From positions 186,001 through 250,000 of the IMG/VR virus record IMGVR_UViG_3300025162_000016: a DNA stretch of 64,000 nt; one strand, written 5' to 3'. Shown in pieces: positions 4,416-46,834 of this stretch. The translations under genes and the position numbers were made by a program. The stretch's first letter is position 1. Every line of letters starts with the position of its first letter. The notes beneath the pieces were generated by a model. It did not search any database and had not been told where the DNA came from. It saw only the letters and a program-made list of their open reading frames with translations.

Positions 4416-4600
4416 TAAATAGTTTCAGTTATATCATGAACTACCCACCCGCTAAAGCAAGTGGGTTTCCCCGCTTGATTAGTTTCTGAGTTTCGTGGTT
4501 CACAGACTTGATTACTCTCTCTGTTTTACCAGATACCATCCTCGACGCCTCCCCACGTTTTTGTTTATCGTGCGATTTGATTCCCAAACCACACAAACCT
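4416..4600 (-). ncRNA. predicted TnpB omegaRNA (scaffold to 4436, then guide GATATAACTGAAACTATTTA)
   Basis: Known TnpB architecture: RNA overlaps the gene 3' end and right end; 5' boundary approximate. Confidence 0.6.
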
Positions 4601-7859: not shown

Positions 7860-8759
7860 TCATTTGGGAAGGTTAAACAATCTACCAACCCATTTGAGTA
7901 AAAGCTCTCTTTCTAGATTTAATCTATCGTTAAACATATTGCATCTGTATCCGGTATAATCTCTTACAATATTATAATCTTTAAGAGGACTAGTGTTGTG
8001 ATGTCCTTTGAGTATGTTTGTTACATGGTATTGTGGAATTTTATGATATAATCTAGACCATTGGAGGCAATAATCATCGTGTCCTATTAACAAATCTGGA
8101 CAGTATAAATTATCCGGCATTTGGTCCGATAAGACGGATGCGGGGGATTCGATTGTATTTAATGGTTGTCCGGGTACTACAAAAGGTATAGTTATAATGG
8201 TTGGGTCTCCCCATTTTTCATTAAATGCGTAAAGTGTTTCCAATGAAATTGGATCTGCGAATCGCATAAATCCATCTTTTATATCTTCGTTTTTTATGTT
8301 TTGAATAGAACAATGTTCTATTGGTTCCCATCCTCCCCACATTTTTCTGGCGGCAAATGTTAAAATATATGGGCGAGTTTTACATTGTTTGTCAAATGTT
8401 TCCGATATATAAAAATATTCCAATGGAAGTAAACAATCTGCGTCTCCCCAATAATTGAGTCCATTTTTTATTGAAAACTCTCGTTTAACGCAAGGGGGTC
8501 CAAAAATCGGATCTTTGTCTGTTATATGAACAATCTCACAGTGTTTAACAAAGGGATGACTCATGAAATGAATCCATTGTTCTTCCGGATCATTGATCGG
8601 AGTGTCCATGTAATTTTTTGTTTGTCCGTTTAGAATTAGAATAAATTCGGTAGGGGCGGTTGAATATTTATATGCATTTTCTATAGACGTTAAAGTTTCA
8701 TTAACTACTTTTACGTCTTTCCAAGAAATTTGCATTGTAAATCTATTTTTATTTATCAT
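7860..8759 (-). CDS. putative GT-A glycosyltransferase
   Basis: WGDAD DxD-like motif, GHDD; cluster context. Confidence 0.55.
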   Translation of the reverse strand: MINKNRFTMQISWKDVKVVNETLTSIENAYKYSTAPTEFILILNGQTKNYMDTPINDPEEQWIHFMSHPFVKHCEIVHITDKDPIFGPPCVKREFSIKNGLNYWGDADCLLPLEYFYISETFDKQCKTRPYILTFAARKMWGGWEPIEHCSIQNIKNEDIKDGFMRFADPISLETLYAFNEKWGDPTIITIPFVVPGQPLNTIESPASVLSDQMPDNLYCPDLLIGHDDYCLQWSRLYHKIPQYHVTNILKGHHNTSPLKDYNIVRDYTGYRCNMFNDRLNLERELLLKWVGRLFNLPK

Positions 8760-11208: not shown

Positions 11209-11209
11209 G

Positions 11210-12184
11210 TTAATATGTTTGATTTTGATAAAGAGTAAGGAATTCCGTAATTTTTTCAATTGATAATCCATGTGCATCTAACATTTCATCTCTCGTGCCA
11301 TTTCCTAAAATATAGCCTTCTTCTAGACCAAAGCGTTTGAGTTTACATTGAAGATTTTTATCGGCAATGGTGTCTGCAATAACGGAGGAAAATCCTCCCC
11401 CGTTTAATGTTTGCTCTTCTAATGTTACAACCAACTCAGCGTGTTTTAAATAGTTATCTAGTACAACCGGAATGGGTTTGATTTGAAATACATCAAATAC
11501 GTTACAATCGATTGTTTTAGTAATTTTAAGTGCTCGACTTAATAGATATCCTGAAGTAACCAAACAAATTTTTGTGCGGCATCCTTCGTCTTTCAATGGA
11601 AACACTCCTTGATTGTTTTCCATATCAAATCCATTATACTGTGTTTCGGTGGTGGCATCATATGTTTTTTCATAAAACACATCCAAAGCGGTATCGTATG
11701 CTCGTTCAAGTCTTATATAAATCAATTTTCGGTTTTTATACGTATATTTTACCAATTGTTTGACTGCGGGATTGGTTGCGGGAGAATAAATTTCTATTCC
11801 GCATATGCTTCGCATATACGCCATATCATCTGTCGGATTGTGGGCGGCACCCGCTGGTGCATATCCTAGTCCGACTCCCACTCCTAGAATGGTAATAGGG
11901 TTTTGAGCAATTGCACATGAATATCTAATCTGCTCGAAGCATCGAGCCGACCAGCATGCCATATAATAAACATATACCTTTTTCCCACGGCTAGAGAACC
12001 CTGCCGCTACATTGATGGAGTTCTGTTCTGAAATGCCGGTTGCGAAAAATTGATTTGGAACTTCTTCTCTCCATTTGTCTAACGCCGGTGCTCCCATATC
12101 CGGAGAAATTAGAATTACATCTTTATCCTTTTTAGCTAGAGTTAGAAGCTCCATTAAAAATAAATCTCGTTGGGTAACACTCAT
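11210..12184 (-). CDS. transketolase C-terminal (pyrimidine-binding) subunit
   Basis: GISEQN, EQIR, YIRLER, TLEEQ; ATGA overlap with upstream gene. Confidence 0.9.
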   Translation of the reverse strand: MSVTQRDLFLMELLTLAKKDKDVILISPDMGAPALDKWREEVPNQFFATGISEQNSINVAAGFSSRGKKVYVYYMACWSARCFEQIRYSCAIAQNPITILGVGVGLGYAPAGAAHNPTDDMAYMRSICGIEIYSPATNPAVKQLVKYTYKNRKLIYIRLERAYDTALDVFYEKTYDATTETQYNGFDMENNQGVFPLKDEGCRTKICLVTSGYLLSRALKITKTIDCNVFDVFQIKPIPVVLDNYLKHAELVVTLEEQTLNGGGFSSVIADTIADKNLQCKLKRFGLEEGYILGNGTRDEMLDAHGLSIEKITEFLTLYQNQTY

Positions 12185-24886: not shown

Positions 24887-25573
24887 TTATTTTGTTTTTT
24901 GCCCGAACACGGTATGTCCACGATTTTCATCAATCGTAAACCATTCATTATATCGAATATTTGTTTTTAATTGAGTTGCCATGGTTTTTTCGTGATATAA
25001 TGCCAAATTAAAATCAAATGGCAATGTGGTAAAGGAAGCGTGCCCTTCTATTTTCTCATGCAGTCGTCGTTCCCAATGAATTCGAGATGGATCGTTTTTA
25101 TAAATGCGTCCTTGAAAATCAGGAGCATTTACTATGGGTCTGTTATCACATTCTGGACATGGAGTAAGTCTCCACCCCCATGTTTTAGCATCTTGAATTG
25201 TTACTCCAATATAATCATTAATTCGGCTAACAAAAATCAATTCAATTGTTGGATTTAACTCAATAATGGATTTGATATTAATAATTAGATTTGGATTTGG
25301 TATCTCATCCCCGTCAATTTGAAATATCCATGGATTTTTACATTGCTCGTTTCCAAAATTTTTATGTTGGGAATAATTACGATCAAGTTTGTGCGGAATT
25401 AATTGTATAGAATCTTTCCATTTATTGAAAATTTCTATTGTATTCGGATTATCAGAGAAATCATCTAATATAATAACTTCATCTTCTATATCTTTATGAG
25501 CAATAACATTGGTTAAACACTTATCTAAAGTATCACTTTCATTGTGTGATGTTATTAAATAACTTATTTTCAT
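24887..25573 (-). CDS. GT2 glycosyltransferase (KdtX/LgtF-like)
   Basis: ISYLITSHNE, DDFSD, QIDGDE, PDFQGR, LHE. Confidence 0.88.
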   Translation of the reverse strand: MKISYLITSHNESDTLDKCLTNVIAHKDIEDEVIILDDFSDNPNTIEIFNKWKDSIQLIPHKLDRNYSQHKNFGNEQCKNPWIFQIDGDEIPNPNLIINIKSIIELNPTIELIFVSRINDYIGVTIQDAKTWGWRLTPCPECDNRPIVNAPDFQGRIYKNDPSRIHWERRLHEKIEGHASFTTLPFDFNLALYHEKTMATQLKTNIRYNEWFTIDENRGHTVFGQKTK

Positions 25574-28148
25574 AATTTTTATTTTCACTTATCGGCATTT
25601 TCGCAATTTCCGCTTGAGTTGGAGGATTTATTGGTGTAGACGCAGTTGGTAATTTTGGGAGATTTAGTTTTTTTAATTTTGGAAGTATAATTTGTTGCGG
25701 TAATACGAATTTAGGAACATATTTTTCCAAAAGCGAGTGAAATGCTTTATCCATTGCCTCAATTGAGAATTTCTCGGCATTTTCAGCACGAAGTAATTCC
25801 GCATTAGGTAATAGCGTATCGTAATTATTAAAAGCTTGTCGCATTTGTTCGGCGGCTTTACCATAATCGACTGTAAACCATTGCGATTCAGCTACAAACC
25901 ATTCATTTACTGCTTCGCCGGAAATCTGTTCTAGTTTACCTTCAAAGAAATTTGCATATTTCGGATTCATGAAATCCAGATGACCACTCCATTTTGGTGC
26001 AATCAATGGTTTTCCGCTTAATGTTGATAATAACATGGGATGACAATTGTGTACTACAAAATTTTCCGTACAGTAACTTTCATCTTCTTCGACTGATAAA
26101 TTATATACCATTCCTTCATATGGTAAGGACTCGATGGTTTTTAGTTTAAATACATGATATGCTACATTATCATATGAAACGGAAAATGATTTGGGAAGTC
26201 CTCCACGGGACAAATATTTATCATTTTGGTATTGAATATTACAAAAACTGTGATTTTTATTTAAAATATCAATAAGTGCGGTATTAGACTTATAATTTGA
26301 AGTTCGAATACGACTAACCGGTGCATTAAATTTATTGTTATCTTTTACATCATGACAAGAGTGTATATTTAATTTTAATAAACACTCTCGTACATCTCTA
26401 ATTAAACTGTCATTTACTAATTGAAGAGATATGTTTTTATTATTTTTTAAACTACCATCTCCCATGAAAATTGATGATATTAAATTTTCAACAAATATTT
26501 TTGATGAATTTTTTAATATCATGGGAATTCTTTTATAAATTGCCCCTGATCCAAATAAAGCCGTTAAGAATTCTCCGATAATTGCGGAATAAAAAATCAG
26601 CTTTAATGAATTTTTAGTTTTGTGAGGTTCGAGGGAGTAAGAATCAATTTCAAAGACAGTTTTGAAACATTCTATTAATTCTTTTGCTATTGTAAGTTCC
26701 TCGTTTTTATTTAAAGAAAATATGATTGCTCCGTTGGAAACGCATCCCTCGGATAGAAAATAACCACATATTTTTGCAAATTCTGGAGATAAAACAATAT
26801 TATTTTTTATTTTCTTTATAGTAGTTTCATTTGAATGAATATAGGTTAAGTTTTCGTCTCGCAATTCAATGTTTGGACACTGTATAAATTCAGATATGTT
26901 TATGGCCGGAGGTGTGGTCCAAGTGTGTTCTTCGGGCAATGCAAGATAATCCGATAGTTTTAATTCCTCTGTTGAAATCCATTGTAAAACATTATTTCTA
27001 TATACATAACATCTATGGTTGGGGGTAAATTGATATGAAATAGAATTGATTCCATTGTAAACCGATATTTTTTTCATTTCTCCACTATAATGTCTAGATA
27101 ATGATGCGGTTACTTTTTTCCATTGTCCCGTATGTGTAAGCACCATATCTTTATTAGTGACATTTTTTATATTTTTTAATCCGGTTTTGGTAACAATTGG
27201 AGTATCTTCTAAAGTACAATAACCCTCTCCATGAGTAAATGAAACGTGAACCTTCACTTTTTTATGATTATAAAGTGAATTCATTTCGATATCACTTAAT
27301 TCGCCATGTAGAAGATAGATGTTTGGCCAGTTGGTAATAGTAGAATTTTCTTTTTTTACCATATCTGTCACTTCTTTTATTTTAGTCAAACACTCATATC
27401 TATCTATGTTAGATAAAGTCGCTCCACTGGTTTTAAGAATAAGTGCAGGGGGATTTTTTACTCCTTTGAATGTCTCAAGGAAAGTTTTCATTAACCATCC
27501 GATAGATTTTCTATCTGAATTCATTGAACCACCCGTCCATTGACCCACGAACAGAAATGCGAAGTTTTCAGTAATCCCAGACATGGCAGTTTCCAATGAA
27601 TCAATCACCGCATTCGTTTTATGATATAAATTGGTGTTCGCTCCCCAAAATAAAACTTCAATGGGGGTCTTTACGATCAATGGTTCAGTTACACCGGTAG
27701 GAAGTTTTTTAGAATATTGTGCTCCTGCGAATACATCTTTACCATGTTGTGACATGACAATATTTAAATCCATTCGGTTAAGACCTTCTAACCATTCTGG
27801 TTTAGGAATGGTAGTTTCAATGGCGGCGGTAATTCCAATATTGTATTTACCAATTTTCATGATTCCTTGCGGAGTCTGTAAAAATTCATTGGGAATAGAT
27901 ACTTGAATAAATAATTCCGGCTGTCGAGTTAATGGTCCTTGAAGTAGTCTACTAAGAAGTTCTTTAGTTAACGGATCCTTGCCTTCCATTTCTAAGTTTC
28001 TCTGTGGGCATTGTCCCCAACGTGTAGGAACAACTCGAACGTCGTATTTATCGTATTTTAATAGACTTTTAGCTAATGCTAACGCCCAATCTCCATACCC
28101 ACTTCTCGTCATTAATGGCGAGGTAATTACACAAACAGGTTTATTCAT
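25539..28148 (-). CDS. GT4-like glycosyltransferase with intein
   Basis: SGYG, FLFVGQW..RKS, HGEGY|CHP. Confidence 0.88.
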   Translation of the reverse strand: MNKPVCVITSPLMTRSGYGDWALALAKSLLKYDKYDVRVVPTRWGQCPQRNLEMEGKDPLTKELLSRLLQGPLTRQPELFIQVSIPNEFLQTPQGIMKIGKYNIGITAAIETTIPKPEWLEGLNRMDLNIVMSQHGKDVFAGAQYSKKLPTGVTEPLIVKTPIEVLFWGANTNLYHKTNAVIDSLETAMSGITENFAFLFVGQWTGGSMNSDRKSIGWLMKTFLETFKGVKNPPALILKTSGATLSNIDRYECLTKIKEVTDMVKKENSTITNWPNIYLLHGELSDIEMNSLYNHKKVKVHVSFTHGEGYCTLEDTPIVTKTGLKNIKNVTNKDMVLTHTGQWKKVTASLSRHYSGEMKKISVYNGINSISYQFTPNHRCYVYRNNVLQWISTEELKLSDYLALPEEHTWTTPPAINISEFIQCPNIELRDENLTYIHSNETTIKKIKNNIVLSPEFAKICGYFLSEGCVSNGAIIFSLNKNEELTIAKELIECFKTVFEIDSYSLEPHKTKNSLKLIFYSAIIGEFLTALFGSGAIYKRIPMILKNSSKIFVENLISSIFMGDGSLKNNKNISLQLVNDSLIRDVRECLLKLNIHSCHDVKDNNKFNAPVSRIRTSNYKSNTALIDILNKNHSFCNIQYQNDKYLSRGGLPKSFSVSYDNVAYHVFKLKTIESLPYEGMVYNLSVEEDESYCTENFVVHNCHPMLLSTLSGKPLIAPKWSGHLDFMNPKYANFFEGKLEQISGEAVNEWFVAESQWFTVDYGKAAEQMRQAFNNYDTLLPNAELLRAENAEKFSIEAMDKAFHSLLEKYVPKFVLPQQIILPKLKKLNLPKLPTASTPINPPTQAEIAKMPISENKNYENKLFNNITQ
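26046..27218 (-). mobile_element. intein with LAGLIDADG homing endonuclease (391 aa)
   Basis: CTLEDT start, FTPNH, GYFLSEG and IFMGDGS motifs, VVHN|C end. Confidence 0.92.
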
Positions 28149-28279
28149 ATTTTTTAATCTAACTTTTATAGTTCCGGTGCCTAATATTTTATAGTTTATT
28201 CAAAACAAATCTAAATATATGTTTTATAATCAAAATTATATGCATCAAACTCTTTCATGTTATTGGTTTTTCTCTTTTT

Positions 28280-28534
28280 TTAATCTTCGTGACACTGACA
28301 ATAACACCGAGTCATTAACATAGATTCAGATGGTTCTATTCCAAAGTTTTCTTTAACATATTTATAAAAAGATTCCATGCATTCATCGCATAGGTTCATT
28401 TTAAGGTTAAGTGTATCAAAATGACTTCCATACCAACATAAGGTGTTTACTCGGGTAAAACATTCCCGATCGGGATGTTTATCACAGAAGAATTTGACTT
28501 CTTCATAAACTCTTTCTGTTATAACTTTTTTCAT
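28280..28534 (-). CDS. Cys-rich hypothetical protein
   Basis: FCDKH...LCDEC. Confidence 0.6.
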   Translation of the reverse strand: MKKVITERVYEEVKFFCDKHPDRECFTRVNTLCWYGSHFDTLNLKMNLCDECMESFYKYVKENFGIEPSESMLMTRCYCQCHED

Positions 28535-29139
28535 ATTTTTTGTAGAACAAAACGAAACTTTCCCGACCTTGTATCCGTATAATAATCGTCCATTTGGGTC
28601 TCGGCATTAATTGTAATAATTTCCTTTCCAGTATTAATATCGAGAATATACATGTAATGAGTTTTTCTGTCTTTAACCTGTTCTCTGAAAAGATATTTCC
28701 AAAAATTGAACCCCTTTTCGGTTTGATTTTCATCTGAGATTATTACAGATTCTCGTTTTAATATATAATCTTCAAAAAAATTTCGTGCTAAACCGTTATC
28801 TCCCTTAAAATTCCATATATGCTTGTTTTCTATTCCTTTAATAGGAGAGGTGATGCGGGTAAAAGAATACTCCATTACAATAAATGGTTTATCTCTCTCC
28901 ATTAAATAATACGTTATATCGTTTCCTTCTATTTTAGAAAATAACCGATATGTAAAACTACCGATTTTATAATTTTCGAGTTCTGTCCCGTTTTTTTCTA
29001 CCCATACCGCATCTCGGGCATTTAAAATTACATCATCACACTGATAATTCCCCCGATAATATTTGTTGGGCAATTCCATTAGGTTATACGTCTCCAATAT
29101 ATATTCTTTATAATCAAAATTATAGGGGTCGAATGTCAT
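28531..29139 (-). CDS. hypothetical protein
   Basis: 202 aa; ISD.NQT.KG..FW motif; ATGA overlaps on both sides. Confidence 0.65.
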   Translation of the reverse strand: MTFDPYNFDYKEYILETYNLMELPNKYYRGNYQCDDVILNARDAVWVEKNGTELENYKIGSFTYRLFSKIEGNDITYYLMERDKPFIVMEYSFTRITSPIKGIENKHIWNFKGDNGLARNFFEDYILKRESVIISDENQTEKGFNFWKYLFREQVKDRKTHYMYILDINTGKEIITINAETQMDDYYTDTRSGKFRFVLQKI

Positions 29140-29717
29140 TGTTGAGATCGTGCTTTAATTTGTTCACTATATGGAATAGAAACATGAACTCCTCCCGTCT
29201 TTAAATAAGTTTGTAAAATACTAGGAGTTGGTTCGGTTTTTTGCGAATCAAACTTAATCTGTTCTTCTGTAAAAATTTCGGTTAAAGGTTTTCCTTTTTT
29301 ATCGGAACTTCCAAATCCACCGGCTCCCCGTTGAGTTTGTGGAAGATCATCCACTAATTCCCATTCCGCTTTATTATAAAACTCAAATATAATTTGGGCT
29401 ATCTTATCTCCAATTTTGATTTCTTTTTCGGTTTTTCCAAAATTGATTAATATAACTCCTATTTCTCCTCTATAATCCTCATCAATAACCCCCCCTAGCA
29501 CATCAATGCCATCTTTATATGCTAGTCCACTTCTGGGTGCAATTCTTCCGTATTGTCCTGCCGGAATGCTAATAGATATTCCCGTCTTAAATAGTTTTCT
29601 ATCCATTGGCATTAAAATATAATCTTCTATAGAATATAAATCATACCCCGCCGAGTGGATACTTCCGCTTATAGGTATAATTGCCGAGTCAATTAGTTTT
29701 TTAATGTATATTTTCAT
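29136..29717 (-). CDS. dut: trimeric dUTPase
   Basis: AGYDL, PRSG, GVIDEDYRG, AQ, RGAGGFGSS. Confidence 0.97.
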   Translation of the reverse strand: MKIYIKKLIDSAIIPISGSIHSAGYDLYSIEDYILMPMDRKLFKTGISISIPAGQYGRIAPRSGLAYKDGIDVLGGVIDEDYRGEIGVILINFGKTEKEIKIGDKIAQIIFEFYNKAEWELVDDLPQTQRGAGGFGSSDKKGKPLTEIFTEEQIKFDSQKTEPTPSILQTYLKTGGVHVSIPYSEQIKARSQQ

Positions 29718-29838
29718 GAAACATATGGTAACTCTATTTTAGCATATTTACAAGATATTATAACGCAAACTCGTCATTTTGTTACGGTAATTACTGTCAT
29801 AGGAACAAGTTGTCCATCGCTATAAATAAACCAGTATG

Positions 29839-32481
29839 TCATAGTTTTTCTAATTTCTTTTTTGTTTCTTCGAGTTTAGTTTCAATCGCAACCTGATCGA
29901 TTGTAGGAACCTCAAATCCCATGTTTTTATCTAACATAAAATTGCCTACATGATCTTTTACCGAATACAATCCAAACGATTTAGATGGTTTCCAATTATG
30001 GAATACATATTCCATTGCATCCACATATTGCTTACACATATTAGTGGCATTTATCCCGCCTTCATTGCACGCCCAACGTCTACCTTCGGCCCCACATTTT
30101 TCTCGCATTGATTTAGACATTTTATACCAATACATATATGCATCCGCAATATCTTCCCATTTCGTTAGATCATCGAAAATATACGGAGTAGGAATACTAC
30201 CTTGAATCATTCTAGTAACTGGCCACAAAGGATATGCCCAAACCCCATGATTTTTATATTTTCCCTCGCTATTAGAACCAAATCCCTGACTAAATTTAAT
30301 CGGATTTCCTTCATCGTCGGTTTGACCAATTTGATCTTGAAGACCACCCGTAACTGATACTATTACCGGAGTCTCACACATGATACTTTCAGCACATGAT
30401 AGTCCATAGCCTTCATTCGAATTATGCAAAATAAATGATTTCATGGTATAAGAATTGTCTTCTTCTACCTCAATATTATATACTTTTCCGGTATAAAGAT
30501 ACTTCTCGATTTTATTTATCGACATCAAATAATATCCGTCTTTAAACCAACTTCTGGATGAATCATTATCATCACTGGTATGAGTAAAATATATTTGATG
30601 ATGAGTATTTCCGGGTTTATATCCAGATGTTCCTTCCGCTAAGCGGATTTTTTTATTCAATCTTACCAGTGCGGTTATTAACTGTTGTTGAAGAACATTG
30701 GAAACAGTAACGATTTTAGTATAGTTACTATCGTTCGTATGACCATCGTATCCATCGGAATCTATAAGGCCATTTATGAATGAATTTAGGATAGTTTCAT
30801 CTTTATTAAACAATATTTCCGATGGAATTTTTTTGGTGTTAGAACTGTTTCCACATATTGTTTTGAAAAAGTTTTCCATTATACCTATAAATGGATGGGA
30901 GAAAAATAAATTAGTGCATTTTTTGTTTTTTTGACCATGGGGTTTAATGGAATAACTTCCACCGAATATATTCACAAAGATATTTCCTATCTTATTGATT
31001 TCATCGTTACCATAATCAGAATTAAAACATATATTATTGTTTGATCCATCTCCGCACCATCTTCCTAAGAGATATGCTAAATCGTTGGTCAGTGGAATTT
31101 TTCTATTTAATACATTTTTACTGTGGGGAAGAAATATTTCAGAATCATTGGACAAATACTTTCTGCTTTTGTATTCGGGAATGAATTTTTCCAAATCAAA
31201 AACCACATTTTCGGTCATATTTTCTGTGAGTTTTGGATACATTACTAAATCTCCCGGTGATAATTCTCCGGATGGAATCCATTCCATATATTGTTGAATT
31301 GACTCGTTTTCGTTCAACAATTTATTTTTCATTTTACTTTTCTTTACCGCCCACACTTTATGTTCGGAGGTAAGTTCCAATGGTTCATTTAAGTTAAATG
31401 GAGTAATTTTAACCATTTCACAGTCAACATTATCATATTCAAATGTTTTTAGTACTGGACGAAATCTTCCTTTATGCGTCAAAACGGTTTCTCCAATTTT
31501 TATTTCTTCAATATTTTTGGGTCCGATTTTAGTTGTTACTTTATAACCCGGTGGAATACAAGATGCATTCACAGTGACATCTGCCATGCTATAAAGATAT
31601 GCCATTTCTTCTGGCGGCATTTTTGCGGGAGAAAAAATTATATCATAATCCGGACATAACGCTTCTTTTACTGCAATTAAATTCGTCCCCGCCTCTTGCA
31701 TTATTTCGGTGTGAAGTAACAAACAACATTTTGCCGCTTCTTCTTTGGGAAGATTATCACAGAAAGTGCGGTAACCTAATATAATGTTGCTAGTGCGTTT
31801 TCGTTGAACATTTCTACTATTGTAAAAAATAACGAAATCGTATTTTTTTCCATTAAAAACCGCTTTTCTGCGATCTCTATATTCTTGTGTAGTAGAATCT
31901 TTTTTATGAAACATATCTTCATTGATTCCATGCGGAACATAATGAAGAAGTGTTTTTCCATTCATTGGTTCATTGATGGTACAACAATTCTTAGGATCAA
32001 GAACCCATTTATTAATATTTTCTGTTTGTCTACTAATGGATAGTAATGCATCGCAGCTTTCATAGAACGCTCGATTATACATTGGATACGGAATGTCATC
32101 CCAGATGTTATAATATGTAATCGGGAGTTTTTTACGTAAACTATGTTCCAATGAGAAAAGCCATCCAAAAAATCTTGGATCGGTAATCATGCAAATGGCA
32201 TCGGGGCGTTCTTGATTAATAATAGAATGTAAAATATTTTCATTGCCATATCCATCGACCGGATAAAGTTTTATATATGCATCATTTATTTTTCTAAGTT
32301 GATTTGTTGCTTGTGATAAATCTAAAACCTTTCCGGTGTCTGGATTTTTAATTGCCCCGGCAATACAACAAAAATCATATTTATGCGCACACCCCAGAAT
32401 CATTTCTCGCCCCATAGTTGCAACCCCCGAATGCATTCTTATATCATCTCCAATCCAAAGTATTTTTTTCTTATTGCTCAT
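29839..32481 (-). CDS. GT4-like glycosyltransferase with intein
   Basis: HSGVAT, VPHGI, SRN..RK, AS|SNEGYGLSCAES (ExxxxxxxE). Confidence 0.9.
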   Translation of the reverse strand: MSNKKKILWIGDDIRMHSGVATMGREMILGCAHKYDFCCIAGAIKNPDTGKVLDLSQATNQLRKINDAYIKLYPVDGYGNENILHSIINQERPDAICMITDPRFFGWLFSLEHSLRKKLPITYYNIWDDIPYPMYNRAFYESCDALLSISRQTENINKWVLDPKNCCTINEPMNGKTLLHYVPHGINEDMFHKKDSTTQEYRDRRKAVFNGKKYDFVIFYNSRNVQRKRTSNIILGYRTFCDNLPKEEAAKCCLLLHTEIMQEAGTNLIAVKEALCPDYDIIFSPAKMPPEEMAYLYSMADVTVNASCIPPGYKVTTKIGPKNIEEIKIGETVLTHKGRFRPVLKTFEYDNVDCEMVKITPFNLNEPLELTSEHKVWAVKKSKMKNKLLNENESIQQYMEWIPSGELSPGDLVMYPKLTENMTENVVFDLEKFIPEYKSRKYLSNDSEIFLPHSKNVLNRKIPLTNDLAYLLGRWCGDGSNNNICFNSDYGNDEINKIGNIFVNIFGGSYSIKPHGQKNKKCTNLFFSHPFIGIMENFFKTICGNSSNTKKIPSEILFNKDETILNSFINGLIDSDGYDGHTNDSNYTKIVTVSNVLQQQLITALVRLNKKIRLAEGTSGYKPGNTHHQIYFTHTSDDNDSSRSWFKDGYYLMSINKIEKYLYTGKVYNIEVEEDNSYTMKSFILHNSNEGYGLSCAESIMCETPVIVSVTGGLQDQIGQTDDEGNPIKFSQGFGSNSEGKYKNHGVWAYPLWPVTRMIQGSIPTPYIFDDLTKWEDIADAYMYWYKMSKSMREKCGAEGRRWACNEGGINATNMCKQYVDAMEYVFHNWKPSKSFGLYSVKDHVGNFMLDKNMGFEVPTIDQVAIETKLEETKKKLEKL
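30421..31560 (-). mobile_element. intein with LAGLIDADG homing endonuclease (380 aa)
   Basis: CIPPG start, LTSEH, LLGRWCGDG and INGLIDSDG motifs, ILHN|S end. Confidence 0.92.
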
Positions 32482-33376
32482 TTATCAGTTCTCCTTTTCT
32501 ATTAAAAACCATTTTTTGAAATTTAAATCCTGCATCTAGAATTGATTGTTTTTTAAGATAAAGATTTTTATCAATTCTATTGGTCCATGTGGATTTTACT
32601 TCTACTATTAAATTATCCAATTTTATAAAAATATCCGGAAAATATCTATGTTTTATATTATCTGGCGTATGATACCAGAAAGCTGGCATCTTTGATCTTG
32701 ATACTTCAATATCCGTTTCCTTGTATATTTTTAAAAGTGCATTTATAGCCATTGGCTCGTATCCCTGGATTTTAACTTCCTTCCCAGACGGTAAAATGAA
32801 TTTTTTCATTTTAAACTTTTGCTGCCGTGTATGTATTTCGGAAACCTGTGAAACACTTTCTACTCCATATTTTTTTAAATTAGTATTTTTACATTTCTCT
32901 CGATTTGTATAATTTTTAGTTCCGTGGTTTTTGATACAAGTGGCGTTTTTCTTTTCTAAGACGGATGGTATTTGTAATACATGAGATACTCCGTATTTTT
33001 TAATATTATTAATTTTTCGTGTTTCTTTGGCGGATTTTATTTGGCCATTCCATTTTACTCCATGTTTTTTATAATTAGATTCATTTATTTTTTGTAATCT
33101 GTACGGATGTTTAGATGCGCATTTATCGGAACAAAAAACTGAGTACCCTTTTAATAAACCTTTAAACCCCCTTCCTTCTAATAGTTTATTGCAATTTAAA
33201 CAAAATTGTTCCCCATAAATGTGTTTATATATTTTTTCAGAAATATTACGTCCCAAATAAGCATCGTTAATAAATTTATATGTTGCCGGATGATATGCTT
33301 TAAGTGTACGATAATATAAACGAGTATTTTGTTTGGCTATTGATAATATTTTCTCGTTGGATAATATATCATTCAT
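32471..33376 (-). CDS. free-standing putative homing endonuclease (PD-(D/E)XK/TnsA-like) with KKYGV repeats
   Basis: CxxC/CxxxC, four N.KK(Y/H)G repeats, HRYFPDIF...IVEVKS. Confidence 0.75.
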   Translation of the reverse strand: MNDILSNEKILSIAKQNTRLYYRTLKAYHPATYKFINDAYLGRNISEKIYKHIYGEQFCLNCNKLLEGRGFKGLLKGYSVFCSDKCASKHPYRLQKINESNYKKHGVKWNGQIKSAKETRKINNIKKYGVSHVLQIPSVLEKKNATCIKNHGTKNYTNREKCKNTNLKKYGVESVSQVSEIHTRQQKFKMKKFILPSGKEVKIQGYEPMAINALLKIYKETDIEVSRSKMPAFWYHTPDNIKHRYFPDIFIKLDNLIVEVKSTWTNRIDKNLYLKKQSILDAGFKFQKMVFNRKGELINEQ

Positions 33377-36887: not shown

Positions 36888-38120
36888 ATGCCTAAATTTC
36901 TAAAAGGATATAAAATTGAATTGGCCCCAAATAAGTGTCAGATGACATTGTTTAGAAAGCATTTTGGAGCCAGCAGATTCGCATTTAATTGGGCGTTACA
37001 AAAGAAAAAAGAAGCATTTGATAGGAAAGAAAAGATTCCGAACAATATTGAATTGCATAGAGAGTTGAATAAACTTAAGGGAACGGATGCCTTACCTTGG
37101 GCTTACGATGTTAGTAAAGTCGCATTTCAGTCGGGTTTAATTAACTGTGATAGAGCATTTCAGAATTTCTTTAATCGTTGTAAGAAAAAAGTCAAAGGGA
37201 AGAAGGGATTCCCAAAATTTAAGTCAAAGAAGAATGAGACACAATCATTCAAATTAGATGGTTCGATATACTTGACAGATAAATCTCACATTAAATTACC
37301 TCGTATTGGTAAAGTCAAGTTAAAAGAATTGGATTACATTCCAATCGATACTGAAATCAAATCAGTAACAATTAGTCGTAAAAGCAGTAAATGGTTCGTA
37401 TCTTGTTTGGTAGAATCTGATATTAAGATGCTCCCACAGACAGATAAGAAAGTTGGAATTGATTTAGGAATTAAGACCTTAGCAACCTGTTCTAATGGGA
37501 CTAAATATGAGAATCCCAACGCATTAAAATTCAATTTACGAAAATTAAAGAGAAAACAACGTCAGTTAAGTAGAAAAAAGAAAGGAAGTCAAAATTATAA
37601 AAAATCAAAGTTAAAACTTTCTAAGTTACATAATAGAATTTCTAACATAAGGAAAGATTCGTCGCACAAAGCGACTTCAAAAATAATTAACGAAAACCAA
37701 GTAATTGTTATTGAAGGATTGAAGATTTCCAATATGTTAAAAAATCACTGTCTTGCTCAGGCAATTAGTGATATGTCTGCCCATGAATTTCGCAGACAGT
37801 TAGAATATAAGGCAAAATGGTATGGTCGTGAAATCATTATTGCCGATACTTACTTTCCATCTAGCAAGACTTGTTCGTGTTGTGGATGGAAGAATGATAA
37901 TCTCACATTGAAAGATAGAATTTTCAAATGTGAGATTTGTAAGAATGAGATGGATAGAGACTTGAATGCCTCTAAAAATCTTGAGAAACTTTCTACCGTC
38001 AGTTCGACGGGAATTTACGCCTTGGGAGATGGGAGTTCGGTTTGTCCAGCAATGGATAAATCTAGCCCGTCGTTGAAAAAGGAATCTAACGGAAAATTTA
38101 CATACACCCTAAAAAGATGA
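36888..38120 (+). CDS. tnpB: TnpB RNA-guided endonuclease (IS607-type)
   Basis: GIDLG, IEGL, DRDLNA; CSCC/CEIC zinc ribbon. Confidence 0.95.
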   Translation: MPKFLKGYKIELAPNKCQMTLFRKHFGASRFAFNWALQKKKEAFDRKEKIPNNIELHRELNKLKGTDALPWAYDVSKVAFQSGLINCDRAFQNFFNRCKKKVKGKKGFPKFKSKKNETQSFKLDGSIYLTDKSHIKLPRIGKVKLKELDYIPIDTEIKSVTISRKSSKWFVSCLVESDIKMLPQTDKKVGIDLGIKTLATCSNGTKYENPNALKFNLRKLKRKQRQLSRKKKGSQNYKKSKLKLSKLHNRISNIRKDSSHKATSKIINENQVIVIEGLKISNMLKNHCLAQAISDMSAHEFRRQLEYKAKWYGREIIIADTYFPSSKTCSCCGWKNDNLTLKDRIFKCEICKNEMDRDLNASKNLEKLSTVSSTGIYALGDGSSVCPAMDKSSPSLKKESNGKFTYTLKR

Positions 38121-44654: not shown

Positions 44655-45803
44655 ATGGACGATAATTTTAAATTGGCGGATATAAAAATACGAGATCCTC
44701 TTAGAGAACGAGGGGTATTATATGTTGGTCAATATGGAACTAGTGGATATGCTACTGCGGCAAAAGGGTATATATGTGACTTTTTGATGCGGGGTATTCC
44801 AATTAGTTGGAATCCATTGAAACTTGATGATTCGGAATTATCCGATGATAATTTTTATAACATATTGGCTAAGACTGTTATAGGCAAGGCAATTTCAGAT
44901 GTACGTACTATTATTTTGCATTGCACTGCGGATTTGTGGCCAACTTACAAATCTGAAAATGCCGATAAATTTCTCAATAGAAATATTATAGGATATACCG
45001 TATGGGAGACAAATGTCTTGCCGAGATATTGGCCAAAATTTATTAACGAATCGGTGAATGAAGTGTGGTGTCCTTCTCATTATAATTACGAAACTTTTGT
45101 TAATTCTGGGGTAACCATTCCGATTAGAGTAGTTCCTCATATATTTTTAAAAATTGATCTTCCAAAACGGGAGCAGGTTTTATTAACGGATTGTGTGGGA
45201 AATTCGATTGTAGATGATCCCCATGTAGTTACTTTTTATAACAATTCGATTGTAGATGATCCTCATGCATTTACTTTTTATAATATAAGTGAATTAAATG
45301 AAAGAAAAAACGTTATAAGTTTGGTAGAGACGTTTTGTAAAGCATTTACTAAATCGGATTCAGTTAGATTGCTTCTTAAAGTTCATTATAAAAATTACAC
45401 GACGGAAAATTTAACTTATTGTATTAATAAGATTTTTGCGGTTCTTAAGGATTTCCCGAATCATGCCTCGGTGATATTGATAACTGGAAATTTAACCGAA
45501 CTTGAACTTCTTTCATTACATTCAATTGGAGATTGCTATGTATCTCTTACCAGATCAGAGGCATTTGGGTTAACTATTTTTGATGCTATGAATTATGGTA
45601 AGAAAGTTATAGTTACTGGATATGGCGGACAGGTTGATTATTTGGGAAATAACTATTCTGGTCTGGTGAGTTACAAATTGGTAGATGTTCAGAATATGGA
45701 TAGTTTTACTCATGGATATTATATGCAGGGTAAACAACAATGGGCAGCACCAAATATTGATCATGCAGTAGAGTTAATGCGAAAAGTTGTAAATATCATT
45801 TAA
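44655..45803 (+). CDS. GT4 glycosyltransferase
   Basis: SGYA, TVWET, RKN, RSEAFGL..FDAM. Confidence 0.9.
   Translation: MDDNFKLADIKIRDPLRERGVLYVGQYGTSGYATAAKGYICDFLMRGIPISWNPLKLDDSELSDDNFYNILAKTVIGKAISDVRTIILHCTADLWPTYKSENADKFLNRNIIGYTVWETNVLPRYWPKFINESVNEVWCPSHYNYETFVNSGVTIPIRVVPHIFLKIDLPKREQVLLTDCVGNSIVDDPHVVTFYNNSIVDDPHAFTFYNISELNERKNVISLVETFCKAFTKSDSVRLLLKVHYKNYTTENLTYCINKIFAVLKDFPNHASVILITGNLTELELLSLHSIGDCYVSLTRSEAFGLTIFDAMNYGKKVIVTGYGGQVDYLGNNYSGLVSYKLVDVQNMDSFTHGYYMQGKQQWAAPNIDHAVELMRKVVNII
45201..45284 (+). repeat. in-frame 42-bp tandem duplication
   Basis: NSIVDDPHVVTFYN / NSIVDDPHAFTFYN. Confidence 0.95.
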
Positions 45804-45814
45804 AAAAAATATAT

Positions 45815-46834
45815 ATGGATACTATTGTTGCTGTTACCGCACAAATTCCCTATCTGAATAAAGATGGAAAAATTGTGGCGTTCGGGGGAGGAGTTCCTAG
45901 AGCCATGATTAATCTGTTTAATTGCATATCAGATGTTTATAAGATTTACATTATGTATGTTCCTCAATATACTCCTAACAATGGAACAATGTTTCAATAC
46001 GAAAATATGACTTATATACCCGAAATTTCATTTTTTAAGTTTGAGGAAGTGTATGATAAATATTTTATTGGGATTGATTTCATTTTTATGATAGATATAT
46101 TTATACATGGGGAAAGTTCTTTTCAATGGAGATCATTGCCTCATAAAAAAATAGGAATGATTCAAACATGGAATACTGATCCTTTAGATATTGGAATGAA
46201 TGGAATAATTTGCAATGGGATCGAAGAGAGAATTAATATGTCTCCGCTATTATTTCCTGTTGGTTGTTTATATGATTCAAATGTGTTTTATCCCACAAAT
46301 CAGCCCAGAAAAAACTTTGCGTTGTATACTGGCCGATTGGATGTGGATAAAAACGTTCAATATTTGATTGATAATTGGAAAAAAATTTATGAGAAATTTG
46401 GAACTATATTGAAACTAATAGGTCCGTGTAATGTACAGAAAGTTAAAGTTCCTGAGTGTGATTATATAATCAATTTACCTCCGGTTGAAGATGCTATCCT
46501 CAGAGCGTATTATAATACATGTAAATGTTTTATAATGCCGTCAAAATGTGAAAGTTTTTGCTGTTCACTAGTTGAGGCGCTCGCCTGTAATGCTCCTTGT
46601 GTTGTTGATGGTGCAGTTGGATCAATAAAAAATTTCAATGGAATGGCAAAATATGTTTATGGCAATGGATATATTTGTCAAAATCTTTTATTACAAAATA
46701 TTGAAAACGTTTTATCGTCGTCTGTCGTTTCAGTAGAATCATCCGAGTTTGTAAAAAAACAATTTTCAATATCAGAAAATAAAATAGCTATCAAAAATTT
46801 TATAAAATTATGCCAGGATCCTCCGATATATTAA
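45815..46834 (+). CDS. GT4 glycosyltransferase
   Basis: GGGV, YTGRL..KN, PSKCESFCCSLVEALAC. Confidence 0.88.
   Translation: MDTIVAVTAQIPYLNKDGKIVAFGGGVPRAMINLFNCISDVYKIYIMYVPQYTPNNGTMFQYENMTYIPEISFFKFEEVYDKYFIGIDFIFMIDIFIHGESSFQWRSLPHKKIGMIQTWNTDPLDIGMNGIICNGIEERINMSPLLFPVGCLYDSNVFYPTNQPRKNFALYTGRLDVDKNVQYLIDNWKKIYEKFGTILKLIGPCNVQKVKVPECDYIINLPPVEDAILRAYYNTCKCFIMPSKCESFCCSLVEALACNAPCVVDGAVGSIKNFNGMAKYVYGNGYICQNLLLQNIENVLSSSVVSVESSEFVKKQFSISENKIAIKNFIKLCQDPPIY

What the first reader, a model, noticed from the sequence alone, without database searches (positions are those of the whole stretch)
26046..31560. Two GT4 paralogs each invaded by LAGLIDADG inteins flanking the catalytic Glu
Seen: insertions at AS|SNEGY (2 residues before the Glu) and GEGY|CHP (3 after it). 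The second enzyme has Leu where the second Glu of ExxxxxxxE is expected. Known: inteins favour conserved motifs of essential, mostly replication, proteins. Inference: these GTs are conserved core functions, supporting glycosylation being central to this phage group.
Basis: partly seen in the sequence, partly recalled or inferred. Interest (0 to 1): 0.6.

Follow-up and report, generated by a model that had tools for sequence, protein, structure and literature searches.

The report
Homing inteins in two phage glycosyltransferases
Two neighbouring sugar-transferase genes of a 369-kb freshwater phage are each interrupted, right at the catalytic motif, by a self-splicing mobile protein element (an intein with its own DNA-cutting enzyme). 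The same two elements turn up sporadically at exactly the same two sites in related phages.

Summary
Window 29839-32481(-) (GT-A, 880 aa) holds a 380-aa intein at VNAS|C...HN|SNEGYG. Window 25539-28148(-) (GT-B, 869 aa) holds a 391-aa intein at HGEGY|C...HN|CHPMLL.

Both inteins keep Cys1, TxxH, the terminal His-Asn, a +1 Ser or Cys and two LAGLIDADG motifs.

The two hosts are ancient paralogs (hhalign probability 97.5%, 13% identity). Both are GT-B-fold, GT4-like enzymes, closest to chlorovirus B736L (3OY2). They form a conserved GT-A/GT-B/GT2 module. It is intein-free in about 100 related loci examined, including Flavobacterium phage immuto and Microcystis phage Mel-JY01.

The inteins belong to two site-specific lineages, with at least 7 alleles at the GT-A site and at least 10 at the GT-B site. 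They are scattered on the extein tree as if at random. They are more alike than their exteins, also at third codon positions, and have dN/dS of about 0.1. This fits active homing.

The GT-B site always changes an otherwise invariant Gly to Cys. The Leu in place of the second Glu is a clade trait shared with intein-free orthologs.

The "core function" inference is only partly supported. This is a new host family for an ordinary kind of element.

The parts
29839..32481 (-). GT-A precursor gene (880 aa): GT4-like glycosyltransferase interrupted by an intein
   Evidence: ORF and translation. Pfam Glycos_transf_1 scores 26.3 bits on the precursor and 42.1 bits on the intein-free ortholog G010. The family profile hits 3OY2 at E 6.5e-16.
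31561..32481 (-). GT-A N-extein (307 aa)
   Evidence: 40-76% identical to the N-parts of intein-free homologs.
30421..31560 (-). GT-A intein (380 aa): Cys1, TSEH (block B), VYNIEVEEDNSY (block F), terminal His-Asn
   Evidence: Boundaries. 25% identical to the GT-B intein, E 4e-19. 82% identical to the intein at the same site in G001. dN/dS 0.08.
31042..31080 (-). LAGLIDADG motif 1 of the GT-A intein (LAYLLGRWCGDGS)
   Evidence: The motif is conserved in all 7 alleles.
30748..30789 (-). LAGLIDADG motif 2 of the GT-A intein (LNSFINGLIDSDGY)
29839..30420 (-). GT-A C-extein (193 aa plus stop). It starts with the +1 Ser and the intact SNEGYGLSCAE (E-x7-E).
   Evidence: The +1 Ser is conserved in 68/69 homologs and both Glu residues in 69/69.
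25539..28148 (-). GT-B precursor gene (869 aa): divergent GT-B-fold glycosyltransferase interrupted by an intein
   Evidence: The AF2 model of the precursor (pLDDT 82) matches LAGLIDADG inteins and 3OY2.
27219..28148 (-). GT-B N-extein (310 aa), ending in THGEGY
   Evidence: 40-71% identical to intein-free homologs.
26046..27218 (-). GT-B intein (391 aa): Cys1, TPNH (block B), VYNLSVEEDESY (block F), terminal His-Asn
   Evidence: Pfam Intein_splicing 47.1 bits and LAGLIDADG_3 33.8 bits, both above the cut-offs. 71-72% identical to the inteins of G001 and P0001. dN/dS 0.11.
26742..26774 (-). LAGLIDADG motif 1 of the GT-B intein (KICGYFLSEGC)
   Evidence: The E-G is conserved in all 10 alleles.
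26451..26483 (-). LAGLIDADG motif 2 of the GT-B intein (LISSIFMGDGS)
25539..26045 (-). GT-B C-extein (168 aa plus stop). It starts with the +1 Cys (CHPMLLS), where intein-free homologs have G(R)PLLE.
   Evidence: The Gly-to-Cys change is the one deviation shared by all 10 intein-bearing alleles.
28280..29717 (-). Genes lying between the two GTs: dUTPase (29136-29717), a 202-aa ORF (28531-29139) and an 84-aa ORF (28280-28534). In most relatives the two GTs abut.
   Evidence: A dUTPase-like ORF also separates the GTs in G001 and G010.
24887..25588 (-). GT2-family glycosyltransferase, third member of the conserved GT-A/GT-B/GT2 module
   Evidence: Pfam Glycos_transf_2, E 1.3e-14. Same order in immuto and Mel-JY01.
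32471..33376 (-). DUF7487 protein directly upstream of GT-A. It belongs to a multi-copy family and is a possible free-standing mobile endonuclease gene.
   Evidence: Pfam PF24308, E 1.5e-35. At least 10 places in the genome. Same position in G001.

Best explanation
Two anciently duplicated GT4-like (GT-B fold, retaining-type) glycosyltransferase genes form a conserved tandem module in a clade of aquatic phages with T4-like PolB. In this 369-kb freshwater jumbo phage each has been invaded by a canonical class-1 intein carrying a LAGLIDADG homing endonuclease.

The two inteins belong to two separate, site-specific intein lineages. One always sits before the conserved Ser of S-N-E-G (GT-A). The other always sits between the aromatic residue and the Gly of E-G-(F/Y)-G (GT-B). 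The two sites are five residues apart on the loop that carries the first Glu of EX7E.

Inferred mechanism, not shown here:
- After translation each intein excises itself and ligates the exteins. That yields a roughly 500-aa GT-A with an unchanged motif and a roughly 478-aa GT-B whose invariant Gly is replaced by the obligatory +1 Cys.
- At the DNA level the endonuclease cuts intein-less alleles in co-infecting relatives, and repair copies the intein in (homing).

The inteins are selfish passengers, not part of the enzymes' function. The Leu at the second Glu position of GT-B is an older trait of the clade.
For: Anatomy:
- The inserts are in frame with Cys1, TxxH, His-Asn and a +1 Ser or Cys, and each has two LAGLIDADG motifs with acidic residues.
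- Pfam Intein_splicing and LAGLIDADG_3 match.
- The precursor model matches TliVMA, PI-PkoII, PI-SceI and PI-PfuI, with E from 3e-19 to 3e-11.

Hosts:
- The family profiles are homologous.
- Both are closest to 3OY2, B736L.
- The intein-free ortholog of GT-B folds at pLDDT 91.8 as GT-B. 3OY2 is the best hit at E 1e-17, followed by OtsA, HepE, BshA and MshA.
- The insertion point lies between strand 298-302 and helix 312-318 of that model.

Intein-free orthologs:
- 26 GT-A loci and 80 loci with the GT pair.
- Phages immuto and Mel-JY01.
- The closest PolB relative, G010, with PolB 76%, GT-A 76% and GT-B 71% identical.

Same-site alleles elsewhere:
- GT-A: G001, P0116, P0117, P0118, P0133, P0204.
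- GT-B: G001, P0001, P0003-6, P0009, P0012, P0049, every one with a +1 Cys.

Mobility:
- On the extein tree the intein label needs 9 changes for 10 rows, at least 6 of them forced by starred branches. The shuffled mean is 9.3.
- The inteins group by site at 100/100 support.
- Intein versus extein identity to G001 is 82% versus 60-65% for GT-A and 71% versus 52-62% for GT-B (64% over the conserved part of the GT-B C-extein). Third codon positions are 57-60% versus 41-50%.
- P0005's extein is close to the window's but its intein is only 40% identical.
- Intein GC is 0.29-0.31 against 0.36 for the exteins and the genome.

Functionality:
- dN/dS is 0.08-0.11 for the inteins, including the endonuclease part.
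- The window's GT-B keeps 57 of 60 near-invariant family positions.

Not an assembly artefact: the identical 5.8-kb stretch lies in long contigs from 5 samples of 2 studies.
Against: - Nothing here shows splicing or DNA cleavage. Both are inferred from conserved residues and purifying selection.
- dS values are near saturation (1.4-2.3, and not computable for the GT-B N-extein). The argument that the inteins are younger than the exteins therefore rests on modest differences.
- The GT-A intein falls below the Pfam cut-offs (24.9 and 14.3 bits).
- No intein-less variant of this phage was seen in the metagenome contigs, although contigs hide rare variants.
- Cys in place of an invariant Gly, together with His for Arg and Leu for Glu, could mean that GT-B has altered or reduced activity in this phage.
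Confidence: 0.85

Rival explanations
1. GT-B in this clade is a non-catalytic or re-specialised partner of GT-A (a pseudo-glycosyltransferase, like GtfB beside GtfA). Its donor-binding motif is then free to decay, which is why it tolerates the Gly-to-Cys change and the intein.
For: - The clade holding the window, G001, G010, G004, L036, L037, P0001 and P0005 has G/C-H-P-x-L-L in place of G-R-P-L-L-E. It has lost the Arg kept in 67/70 homologs and the second Glu kept in 68/70.
- GT-A and GT-B are nearly always adjacent.
- Pfam GT models do not recognise GT-B.
Against: - The first Glu and 57 of 60 near-invariant positions are kept.
- Distant intein-bearing alleles retain C-R-P-L-L-E, so the intein does not need a decayed motif.
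- No binding or activity data exist, and no complex was modelled.
Confidence: 0.2
2. The inteins have been domesticated as post-translational switches. Conditional splicing (redox via the Cys1/+1 Cys pair, temperature, or substrate) would time glycan synthesis during infection.
For: - Both inteins sit in the catalytic loop, so the unspliced precursors should be inactive.
- The GT-B intein has Cys1 and a +1 Cys.
- Both inteins are retained together in a second phage, G001.
Against: - The distribution is sporadic and looks random on the extein tree.
- The nearest relative, G010, lacks both inteins.
- The endonuclease domain is under purifying selection. That fits a mobile selfish element better than a fixed regulator.
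Confidence: 0.07
3. The interrupted genes are dead. The inteins no longer splice, and glycosylation is done by the other GTs of the genome.
For: - The genome encodes many other GT domains.
- GT-B departs from its family at three motif positions.
Against: - Both frames are open over 869 and 880 codons.
- All splicing residues are intact.
- Extein dN/dS is 0.13-0.20 and intein dN/dS is 0.08-0.11 against G001.
Confidence: 0.05

Closest known systems
Canonical class-1 inteins with LAGLIDADG homing endonucleases (PI-SceI in yeast VMA1, PI-PfuI, PI-PkoII, TliVMA/PhoVMA)
   Same: Same architecture: a HINT splicing domain split by a two-motif LAGLIDADG endonuclease. Cys1, TxxH, His-Asn and a +1 nucleophile are present, and insertion is in a conserved active-site loop. 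The modelled GT-B precursor matches these structures, with E from 3e-19 to 3e-11.
   Different: The host protein is a sugar-nucleotide glycosyltransferase rather than an ATPase, polymerase, helicase or RNR. Sequence identity to solved inteins is only 9-16%. phmmer finds only a marginal hit to PI-PkoII for intein B and none for intein A.
Phage-borne inteins (terminase large subunit, portal, RNR, helicase, RecA and others), as surveyed by Novikova et al. 2016 (PMC4760082)
   Same: Sporadic, allele-specific distribution among related phages. The same genome also has inteins in the portal, RNR, RecA/UvsX and prohead protease.
   Different: That survey's text does not mention glycosyl-anything as an intein host. 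My literature searches found no report of an intein in a glycosyltransferase.
Chlorovirus NY-2A B736L (PDB 3OY2/3OY7), a GT-B retaining glycosyltransferase whose best ligand is GDP-mannose (PMC4691112; listed as GT4 in PMC6024577)
   Same: It is the best solved relative of both extein families by profile (E 6.5e-16 for GT-A, 0.006 for GT-B) and by fold (E 1e-17, TM 0.61/0.71). It shares the ...N-x-S-S-G-E-G-F-G-L-x-x-x-E... motif.
   Different: About 13% identity. B736L has no intein. It comes from a eukaryotic giant virus, and its acceptor is also unknown.
Intein-free orthologous pair: Flavobacterium phage vB_FspM_immuto gp181/gp180 and Microcystis phage Mel-JY01 WWT39373-5
   Same: Same tandem GT-A/GT-B/(small ORF)/GT2 order, 40-45% identity, and the same motifs.
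   Different: No inteins. GT-B keeps E-G-F/Y-G-R-P-x-x-E. GT-A is split into two ORFs in Mel-JY01.

Membership tests
Intein (class 1, HINT superfamily) | An in-frame insert that is absent from orthologs and whose removal restores a contiguous conserved host motif | tested here: met
   About 100 intein-free homologs have contiguous (A/S)SNEG(F/W)G and GEG(F/Y)G.
Intein (class 1, HINT superfamily) | Catalytic residues: Cys/Ser1, block B TxxH, C-terminal (His)-Asn, and a +1 Cys/Ser/Thr | tested here: met
   Intein A has C308, TSEH, HN and S688. Intein B has C311, TPNH, HN and C702.
Intein (class 1, HINT superfamily) | Match to the HINT / intein splicing domain model or fold | tested here: met
   Intein B scores 47.1 bits on PF14890, above the 35.8 cut-off, and its model matches solved inteins. 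Intein A scores only 24.9 bits, below the cut-off, but is homologous to intein B over its full length at E 4e-19.
Intein (class 1, HINT superfamily) | Actual protein splicing | not testable with these tools
   This needs expression plus SDS-PAGE or mass spectrometry. It is supported only indirectly, by intein dN/dS of 0.08-0.11 and by conserved exteins.
LAGLIDADG homing endonuclease | Two LAGLIDADG motifs, each with a conserved acidic residue, in an alpha-beta-beta-alpha-beta-beta-alpha core | tested here: met
   The motifs are at A 468-480 and 565-578, and at B 459-469 and 556-566. PF14528 scores 33.8 bits for B, above 22.5, but only 14.3 bits for A. The B model has high-confidence helices and strands over residues 450-632 and matches I-DmoI and PI-SceI.
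LAGLIDADG homing endonuclease | Evolutionary signature of homing: one site, sporadic occurrence, intein phylogeny decoupled from the host gene | tested here: met
LAGLIDADG homing endonuclease | Site-specific cleavage of the intein-less allele | not testable with these tools
   This needs an in-vitro cleavage assay.
GT4-like retaining GT-B glycosyltransferase (Pfam Glycos_transf_1) | Match to PF00534 / PF13692 | tested here: met
   This holds for GT-A. The precursor scores 26.3 bits against a 26.4 cut-off. The intein-free ortholog G010 scores 42.1 bits (PF00534) and 33.0 bits (PF13692), and most homologs are annotated with both families.
GT4-like retaining GT-B glycosyltransferase (Pfam Glycos_transf_1) | Match to PF00534 / PF13692 (GT-B protein) | tested here: not met
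   Neither the GT-B exteins nor the ortholog G010 hits any Pfam GT model. Only more distant homologs carry PF00534. I therefore call GT-B 'GT4-like' and not a demonstrated GT4 member.
GT4-like retaining GT-B glycosyltransferase (Pfam Glycos_transf_1) | GT-B fold of two Rossmann-like domains | tested here: met
   The model of the GT-B ortholog has pLDDT 91.8. Foldseek finds 3OY2 at E 1e-17, followed by OtsA, HepE, BshA, MshA and glycogen synthase. The GT-A family profile hits 3OY2 at E 6.5e-16.
GT4-like retaining GT-B glycosyltransferase (Pfam Glycos_transf_1) | E-x7-E motif | tested here: inconclusive
   GT-A has E690...E698 intact. GT-B has only the first Glu, with Leu at the ninth position. 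That is a clade trait, since 68/70 other homologs have Glu there.
GT4-like retaining GT-B glycosyltransferase (Pfam Glycos_transf_1) | Glycosyl transfer from a nucleotide sugar; donor and acceptor identity | not testable with these tools
   This needs an enzyme assay.

The most novel reading that the evidence does not exclude
These are the first described intein alleles in glycosyltransferases. Two independent, site-specific LAGLIDADG intein lineages have colonised the sugar-nucleotide-binding EX7E loop of two paralogous phage GT4-like enzymes. One of them can exist only by replacing an invariant catalytic-loop Gly with Cys. They would then be natural conditional knock-ins in which phage glycan synthesis depends on protein splicing, and a system for asking how homing endonuclease specificity tracks a duplicated target motif.
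Probability: 0.45. Interest if true: 0.5.

Novelty: new member of a known kind. Interest (0 to 1): 0.42.

Why it matters
Inteins are known mostly from ATP- or nucleotide-handling replication, repair and packaging proteins. Two intein lineages at the donor-binding loop of glycosyltransferases would widen the known host range of inteins.

The GT-B allele is a natural case in which a mobile element forces a substitution (Gly to Cys) at an otherwise invariant active-site position. That is directly testable for its fitness or activity cost.

The data also mark a widely conserved but unstudied GT-A/GT-B/GT2 module, set beside a roughly 26-kb sugar-biosynthesis cluster, in a large clade of aquatic phages that includes jumbo phages of 237-400 kb. 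The glycosylation target of this module is unknown.

The inteins themselves are new, compact Cys1/+1 Ser and Cys1/+1 Cys splicing elements. They could be of practical use if they prove active.

Tried and rejected
- Megablast of the whole region against the phage collection gave no match.
- BLASTP between the two sets of exteins showed nothing significant. Only the profile-profile comparison showed paralogy.
- The pattern search with the GT-B N-extein alone found only the phage itself. An alignment-based search was needed.
- The pattern search with the GT-B intein found only the phage itself in IMG/VR. The intein-bearing relative G001 was reached through the GT-A intein.
- A single-sequence PolB scan found only 2 loci. 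The alignment-based scan gave 80, but 10 of the 30 chosen contigs are not held and were not searched.
- phmmer of intein A against PDB sequences found no hit.
- I looked for intein-less variants in the source metagenomes. Contigs show only the intein-bearing form, which is no evidence of absence. Run X6 holds near-identical short contigs that lie inside both inteins (189 and 255 nt), but with so few pieces this is not significant.
- Spliced extein sequences were built only inside scripts for alignments and trees. They were not handed to the fold or look-up tools, which accept only unaltered sequences. The structure jobs used the natural intein-free ortholog G010 and the unaltered precursor instead.
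- The large exhaustive protein search and the complex predictor were not used. No claim here rests on absence of relatives or on binding.
Full report
**Context.** The window is bases 186001-250000 of a 368,758-bp IMG/VR virus record with direct terminal repeats, 100% complete by CheckV and 35.8% GC. Its family-B DNA polymerase is T4-like. The closest isolate is Microcystis phage Mel-JY01 at 40% identity, and other isolates reach at most 31%. The identical 5.8-kb stretch lies in long contigs of freshwater and lake-water metagenomes from five samples of two studies. The sequence is therefore not an assembly accident, and the phage is a freshwater jumbo phage.

**Observation.** Two long minus-strand ORFs cover the finding.
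- GT-A is window 29839-32481, 880 aa.
- GT-B is window 25539-28148, 869 aa.
- In GT-A a 380-residue insert (residues 308-687, window 30421-31560) separates ...VTVNAS from SNEGYGLSCAE.
- In GT-B a 391-residue insert (residues 311-701, window 26046-27218) separates ...THGEGY from CHPMLLS.

Both inserts have these features:
- They begin with Cys.
- They contain a TxxH block B (TSEH in A, TPNH in B).
- They have a VYN(I/L)xVEED block F.
- They end in His-Asn.
- They are followed by a nucleophile, Ser688 in GT-A and Cys702 in GT-B.
- Each has two LAGLIDADG motifs with the acidic residue kept: LLGRWCGDG and INGLIDSDG in A, GYFLSEG and IFMGDG in B.

Pfam places intein B above threshold for Intein_splicing (47.1 bits) and LAGLIDADG_3 (33.8 bits). 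Intein A is below threshold (24.9 bits), but it aligns with intein B end to end at 25% identity, E 4e-19. An AlphaFold2 model of the unaltered GT-B precursor (pLDDT 82) matches solved endonuclease-bearing inteins. TliVMA 7QSU scores E 3e-19, followed by PI-PkoII, PhoVMA, PI-SceI and PI-PfuI. The same model separately matches the glycosyltransferase 3OY2.

**The host proteins.** Extein BLASTP shows no similarity between the two proteins. Profiles built from 31 and 27 intein-free homologs align over 382 columns with probability 97.5%, E 6e-12 and 13% identity. The two proteins are therefore ancient paralogs, not recent ones.

Both profiles find the same best solved relative, chlorovirus NY-2A B736L (3OY2), at E 6.5e-16 for GT-A and 0.006 for GT-B. 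B736L is a retaining GT-B enzyme whose best ligand is GDP-mannose (PMC4691112). It is listed as GT4 in PMC6024577.

GT-A orthologs pass Pfam Glycos_transf_1 and Glyco_trans_1_4. GT-B is invisible to Pfam. Its natural intein-free ortholog from contig G010 is 71% identical. It folds with pLDDT 91.8 into a GT-B fold whose best match is again 3OY2 (E 1e-17), followed by OtsA, HepE, BshA, MshA and glycogen synthase. In that model the insertion point lies between strand 298-302 and helix 312-318. This is the loop that carries the first Glu of EX7E.

**Occupancy in homologs.**
- In IMG/VR, 26 complete or partial GT-A homologs (38-46% identical) all have a contiguous (A/S)SNEG(F/W)G.
- The 80 best GT-B loci, out of at least 507, are all intein-free. 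In 79 of them an intein-free GT-A lies directly upstream.
- The same GT-A/GT-B/GT2 order occurs in Flavobacterium phage vB_FspM_immuto (gp181, gp180, gp178) and in Mel-JY01.

Column statistics:
- The +1 Ser of GT-A is conserved in 68/69 homologs, and both Glu residues in 69/69.
- In the GT-B family the residue at the +1 position is Gly in 70/70.
- The next residue is Arg in 67/70.
- The second Glu is present in 68/70.

**Intein-bearing alleles elsewhere.** They exist, and always at the same two sites.
- Contig IMGVR_UViG_3300022555_000090 (G001, a 49-kb fragment of a genome estimated at about 350 kb) has both: GT-A with NAS|CIPPGY...VCN|SNEG and GT-B with GEGW|CTLEDT...VHN|CHPALLQ.
- The 5.8-billion-protein word search added P0116, P0117, P0118 and P0133 (C-terminal halves of split GT-A genes) and P0204 for the GT-A site.
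- It added P0001, P0003, P0004, P0005, P0006, P0009, P0012 and P0049 for the GT-B site.
- Every GT-B-site allele has Cys in place of the invariant Gly. This is the only deviation from the 60 near-invariant family columns that all of them share.
- The distant GT-B alleles read C-R-P-L-L-E, so the second Glu is compatible with the intein.

It is a clade trait unrelated to the intein.

**Intein versus extein history.**
- On a tree of 52 GT-B exteins the ten intein-bearing rows need 9 changes, at least 6 of them forced by well-supported branches. The mean for shuffled labels is 9.3.
- The window's sister is the intein-free G010 (support 99), and G001's sister is the intein-free P0010.
- G010 is also the closest PolB relative found (76%), and it has neither intein.
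- The 17 inteins split cleanly by insertion site (100/100). Inside the GT-B group the inteins of the window, G001 and P0001 cluster at 71-72% identity. P0005 has an extein of the same clade, yet its intein is only 40% identical.
- Between the window and G001 the inteins are more alike than the exteins. For GT-A the figures are 82% against 60-65%. For GT-B they are 71% against 62% for the N-extein and 52% for the whole C-extein (64% over its conserved part).
- The same holds at third codon positions, 57-60% against 41-50%.
- NG86 dS is lower in the inteins (1.4-1.6) than in the exteins (1.6 to saturated). dN/dS is 0.08-0.11 for the inteins, including the endonuclease part.
- Intein GC is 0.29-0.31 against 0.36 for the exteins and the genome.

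Together this is the classical signature of actively homing inteins that move among co-infecting relatives and are repeatedly gained or lost. All dS values are close to saturation, so the dating argument is only moderately strong.

**Is the pair 'core'?** I selected relatives by PolB alone and searched the 20 held contigs of at least 45 kb with both family profiles.
- 14 have GT-A, and 13 of those have GT-B next to it. In the fourteenth the contig ends just after GT-A.
- Both CheckV-complete genomes have both genes (G004 at 296 kb, G012 at 237 kb).
- The pair lies 2-20 kb from PolB.
- Six fragments lack the pair. One of them, G009, has 64 kb and 28 kb of flank around PolB.
- Many close GT-A homologs sit on contigs of 260-400 kb.

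The pair is therefore widespread and syntenic in this clade, which fits 'conserved'. Universality is not shown, and the acceptor is unknown.

It holds about a dozen inteins, in these hosts:
- a papain-like protease inside the terminal repeat;
- a 1378-aa protein beside the portal;
- the T4-like portal;
- the prohead protease;
- RecA/UvsX;
- ribonucleotide reductase (three inteins);
- a B12-binding radical-SAM enzyme (window 8749-11277).

Glycosylation is certainly prominent. Window 5800-32481 is a co-directional cluster with GT2, GT11 and GT25 domains, a split transketolase, an RmlC-like epimerase, a dehydratase/epimerase, a GHMP kinase, a cytidylyltransferase, a DegT aminotransferase, a UDP-glucose dehydrogenase and several methyltransferases. 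Two more GT4 genes follow PolB.

**Mechanism.** Shown here:
- the anatomy of the inserts;
- the homology of the hosts and of the inteins;
- site specificity;
- sporadic distribution;
- purifying selection.

Inferred:
- Each precursor splices to give a functional enzyme.
- GT-B carries E-G-Y-C-H-P after splicing.
- The LAGLIDADG domains cut intein-less alleles.
- Repair copies in the intein together with the +1 Cys codon.

Alternatives are given as rivals: GT-B as a non-catalytic partner in this clade, regulatory domestication of the inteins, and dead genes.

**Novelty.** Full-text searches for intein together with glycosyltransferase or glycosyl transferase found no report of an intein in such an enzyme. 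The main survey of intein hosts does not mention glycosyl-anything. The library is incomplete and InBase could not be consulted, so 'first' is probable and not certain. The element itself is an ordinary LAGLIDADG intein. What is new is the host family, the two neighbouring sites in paralogs, and the forced Gly-to-Cys change.

Noticed in passing
window 8749-11277 (-): An 842-aa B12-binding radical-SAM enzyme is interrupted by an intein that carries an HNH endonuclease rather than a LAGLIDADG one (Pfam Intein_splicing, PT-HINT, HNH, Radical_SAM, B12-binding). It lies inside the sugar-biosynthesis cluster.
   Followed up: partly
G000:C1 741-2456 (repeated in the DTR at about 362.4-364.1 kb), 62570-66703, 66664-69720, 71424-72500, 169481-171115, 174209-180322: The genome carries about a dozen inteins. 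The hosts are a papain-like cysteine protease inside the terminal repeat, a 1378-aa protein next to the portal (two LAGLIDADG inteins), the T4-like portal (two), the prohead protease, RecA/UvsX, and the RNR large subunit (three, in a 2038-aa ORF).
   Followed up: partly
window 32471-33376 (-); G000 genome-wide: A DUF7487 (PF24308) protein sits directly upstream of GT-A, overlapping its start, and holds the same position in G001. The family matches at least 10 places in the genome. This suggests a multi-copy, possibly mobile gene family.
   Followed up: partly
L087:2556-5181; L035:7995-9486; G002, G003, G004, G006, G007, G018; P0116-P0133: In many relatives GT-A is split at about residue 165 (between the two Rossmann halves) into two ORFs. 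In L087 a 313-aa TnsA-like PD-(D/E)XK endonuclease ORF occupies the split. In G018 a gap of about 1 kb does. The GT-A locus seems to be a hotspot for several kinds of mobile endonuclease.
   Followed up: partly
L119:2008-4713 (G001 GT-A); P0117; P0133: Some GT-A-site inteins end in Cys-Asn (G001, P0117) or Lys-Asn (P0133) instead of His-Asn, so they lack the penultimate His. In G001 the last 8 intein residues differ completely from the window's, although the inteins are 82% identical overall.
   Followed up: no
window 4441-5751 (-), 36888-38120 (+), 59571-60734 (+): Three transposase-like ORFs (phrog_506, annotated 'transposase'; my reading: TnpB / IS200-IS605 type). One lies between the glycan cluster and PolB.
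   Followed up: no
window 5800-32481 (-) and 44655-46834 (+): A glycan-biosynthesis cluster of about 26 kb. It holds GT2, a GT2+GT11 fusion, GT25+DUF268, a split transketolase, an RmlC-like epimerase, an epimerase/dehydratase, a GHMP kinase, a cytidylyltransferase, a DegT aminotransferase, a UDP-Glc/GDP-Man dehydrogenase and methyltransferases. Two further GT4 genes follow PolB. The product and the acceptor are unknown.
   Followed up: partly
window 26920-27108 and 31194-31448 (run X6): In a third study's metagenome, the only long near-identical contigs on this stretch (189 nt with 1 difference, 255 nt with 0) both fall inside the two inteins. The exteins are not covered. This could mean the same inteins in another phage, or simply low coverage. 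It is not significant as it stands.
   Followed up: no
window 26046-27218 and 30421-31560: Both inteins are more AT-rich (GC 0.29 and 0.31) than their exteins and the genome (0.36).
   Followed up: yes
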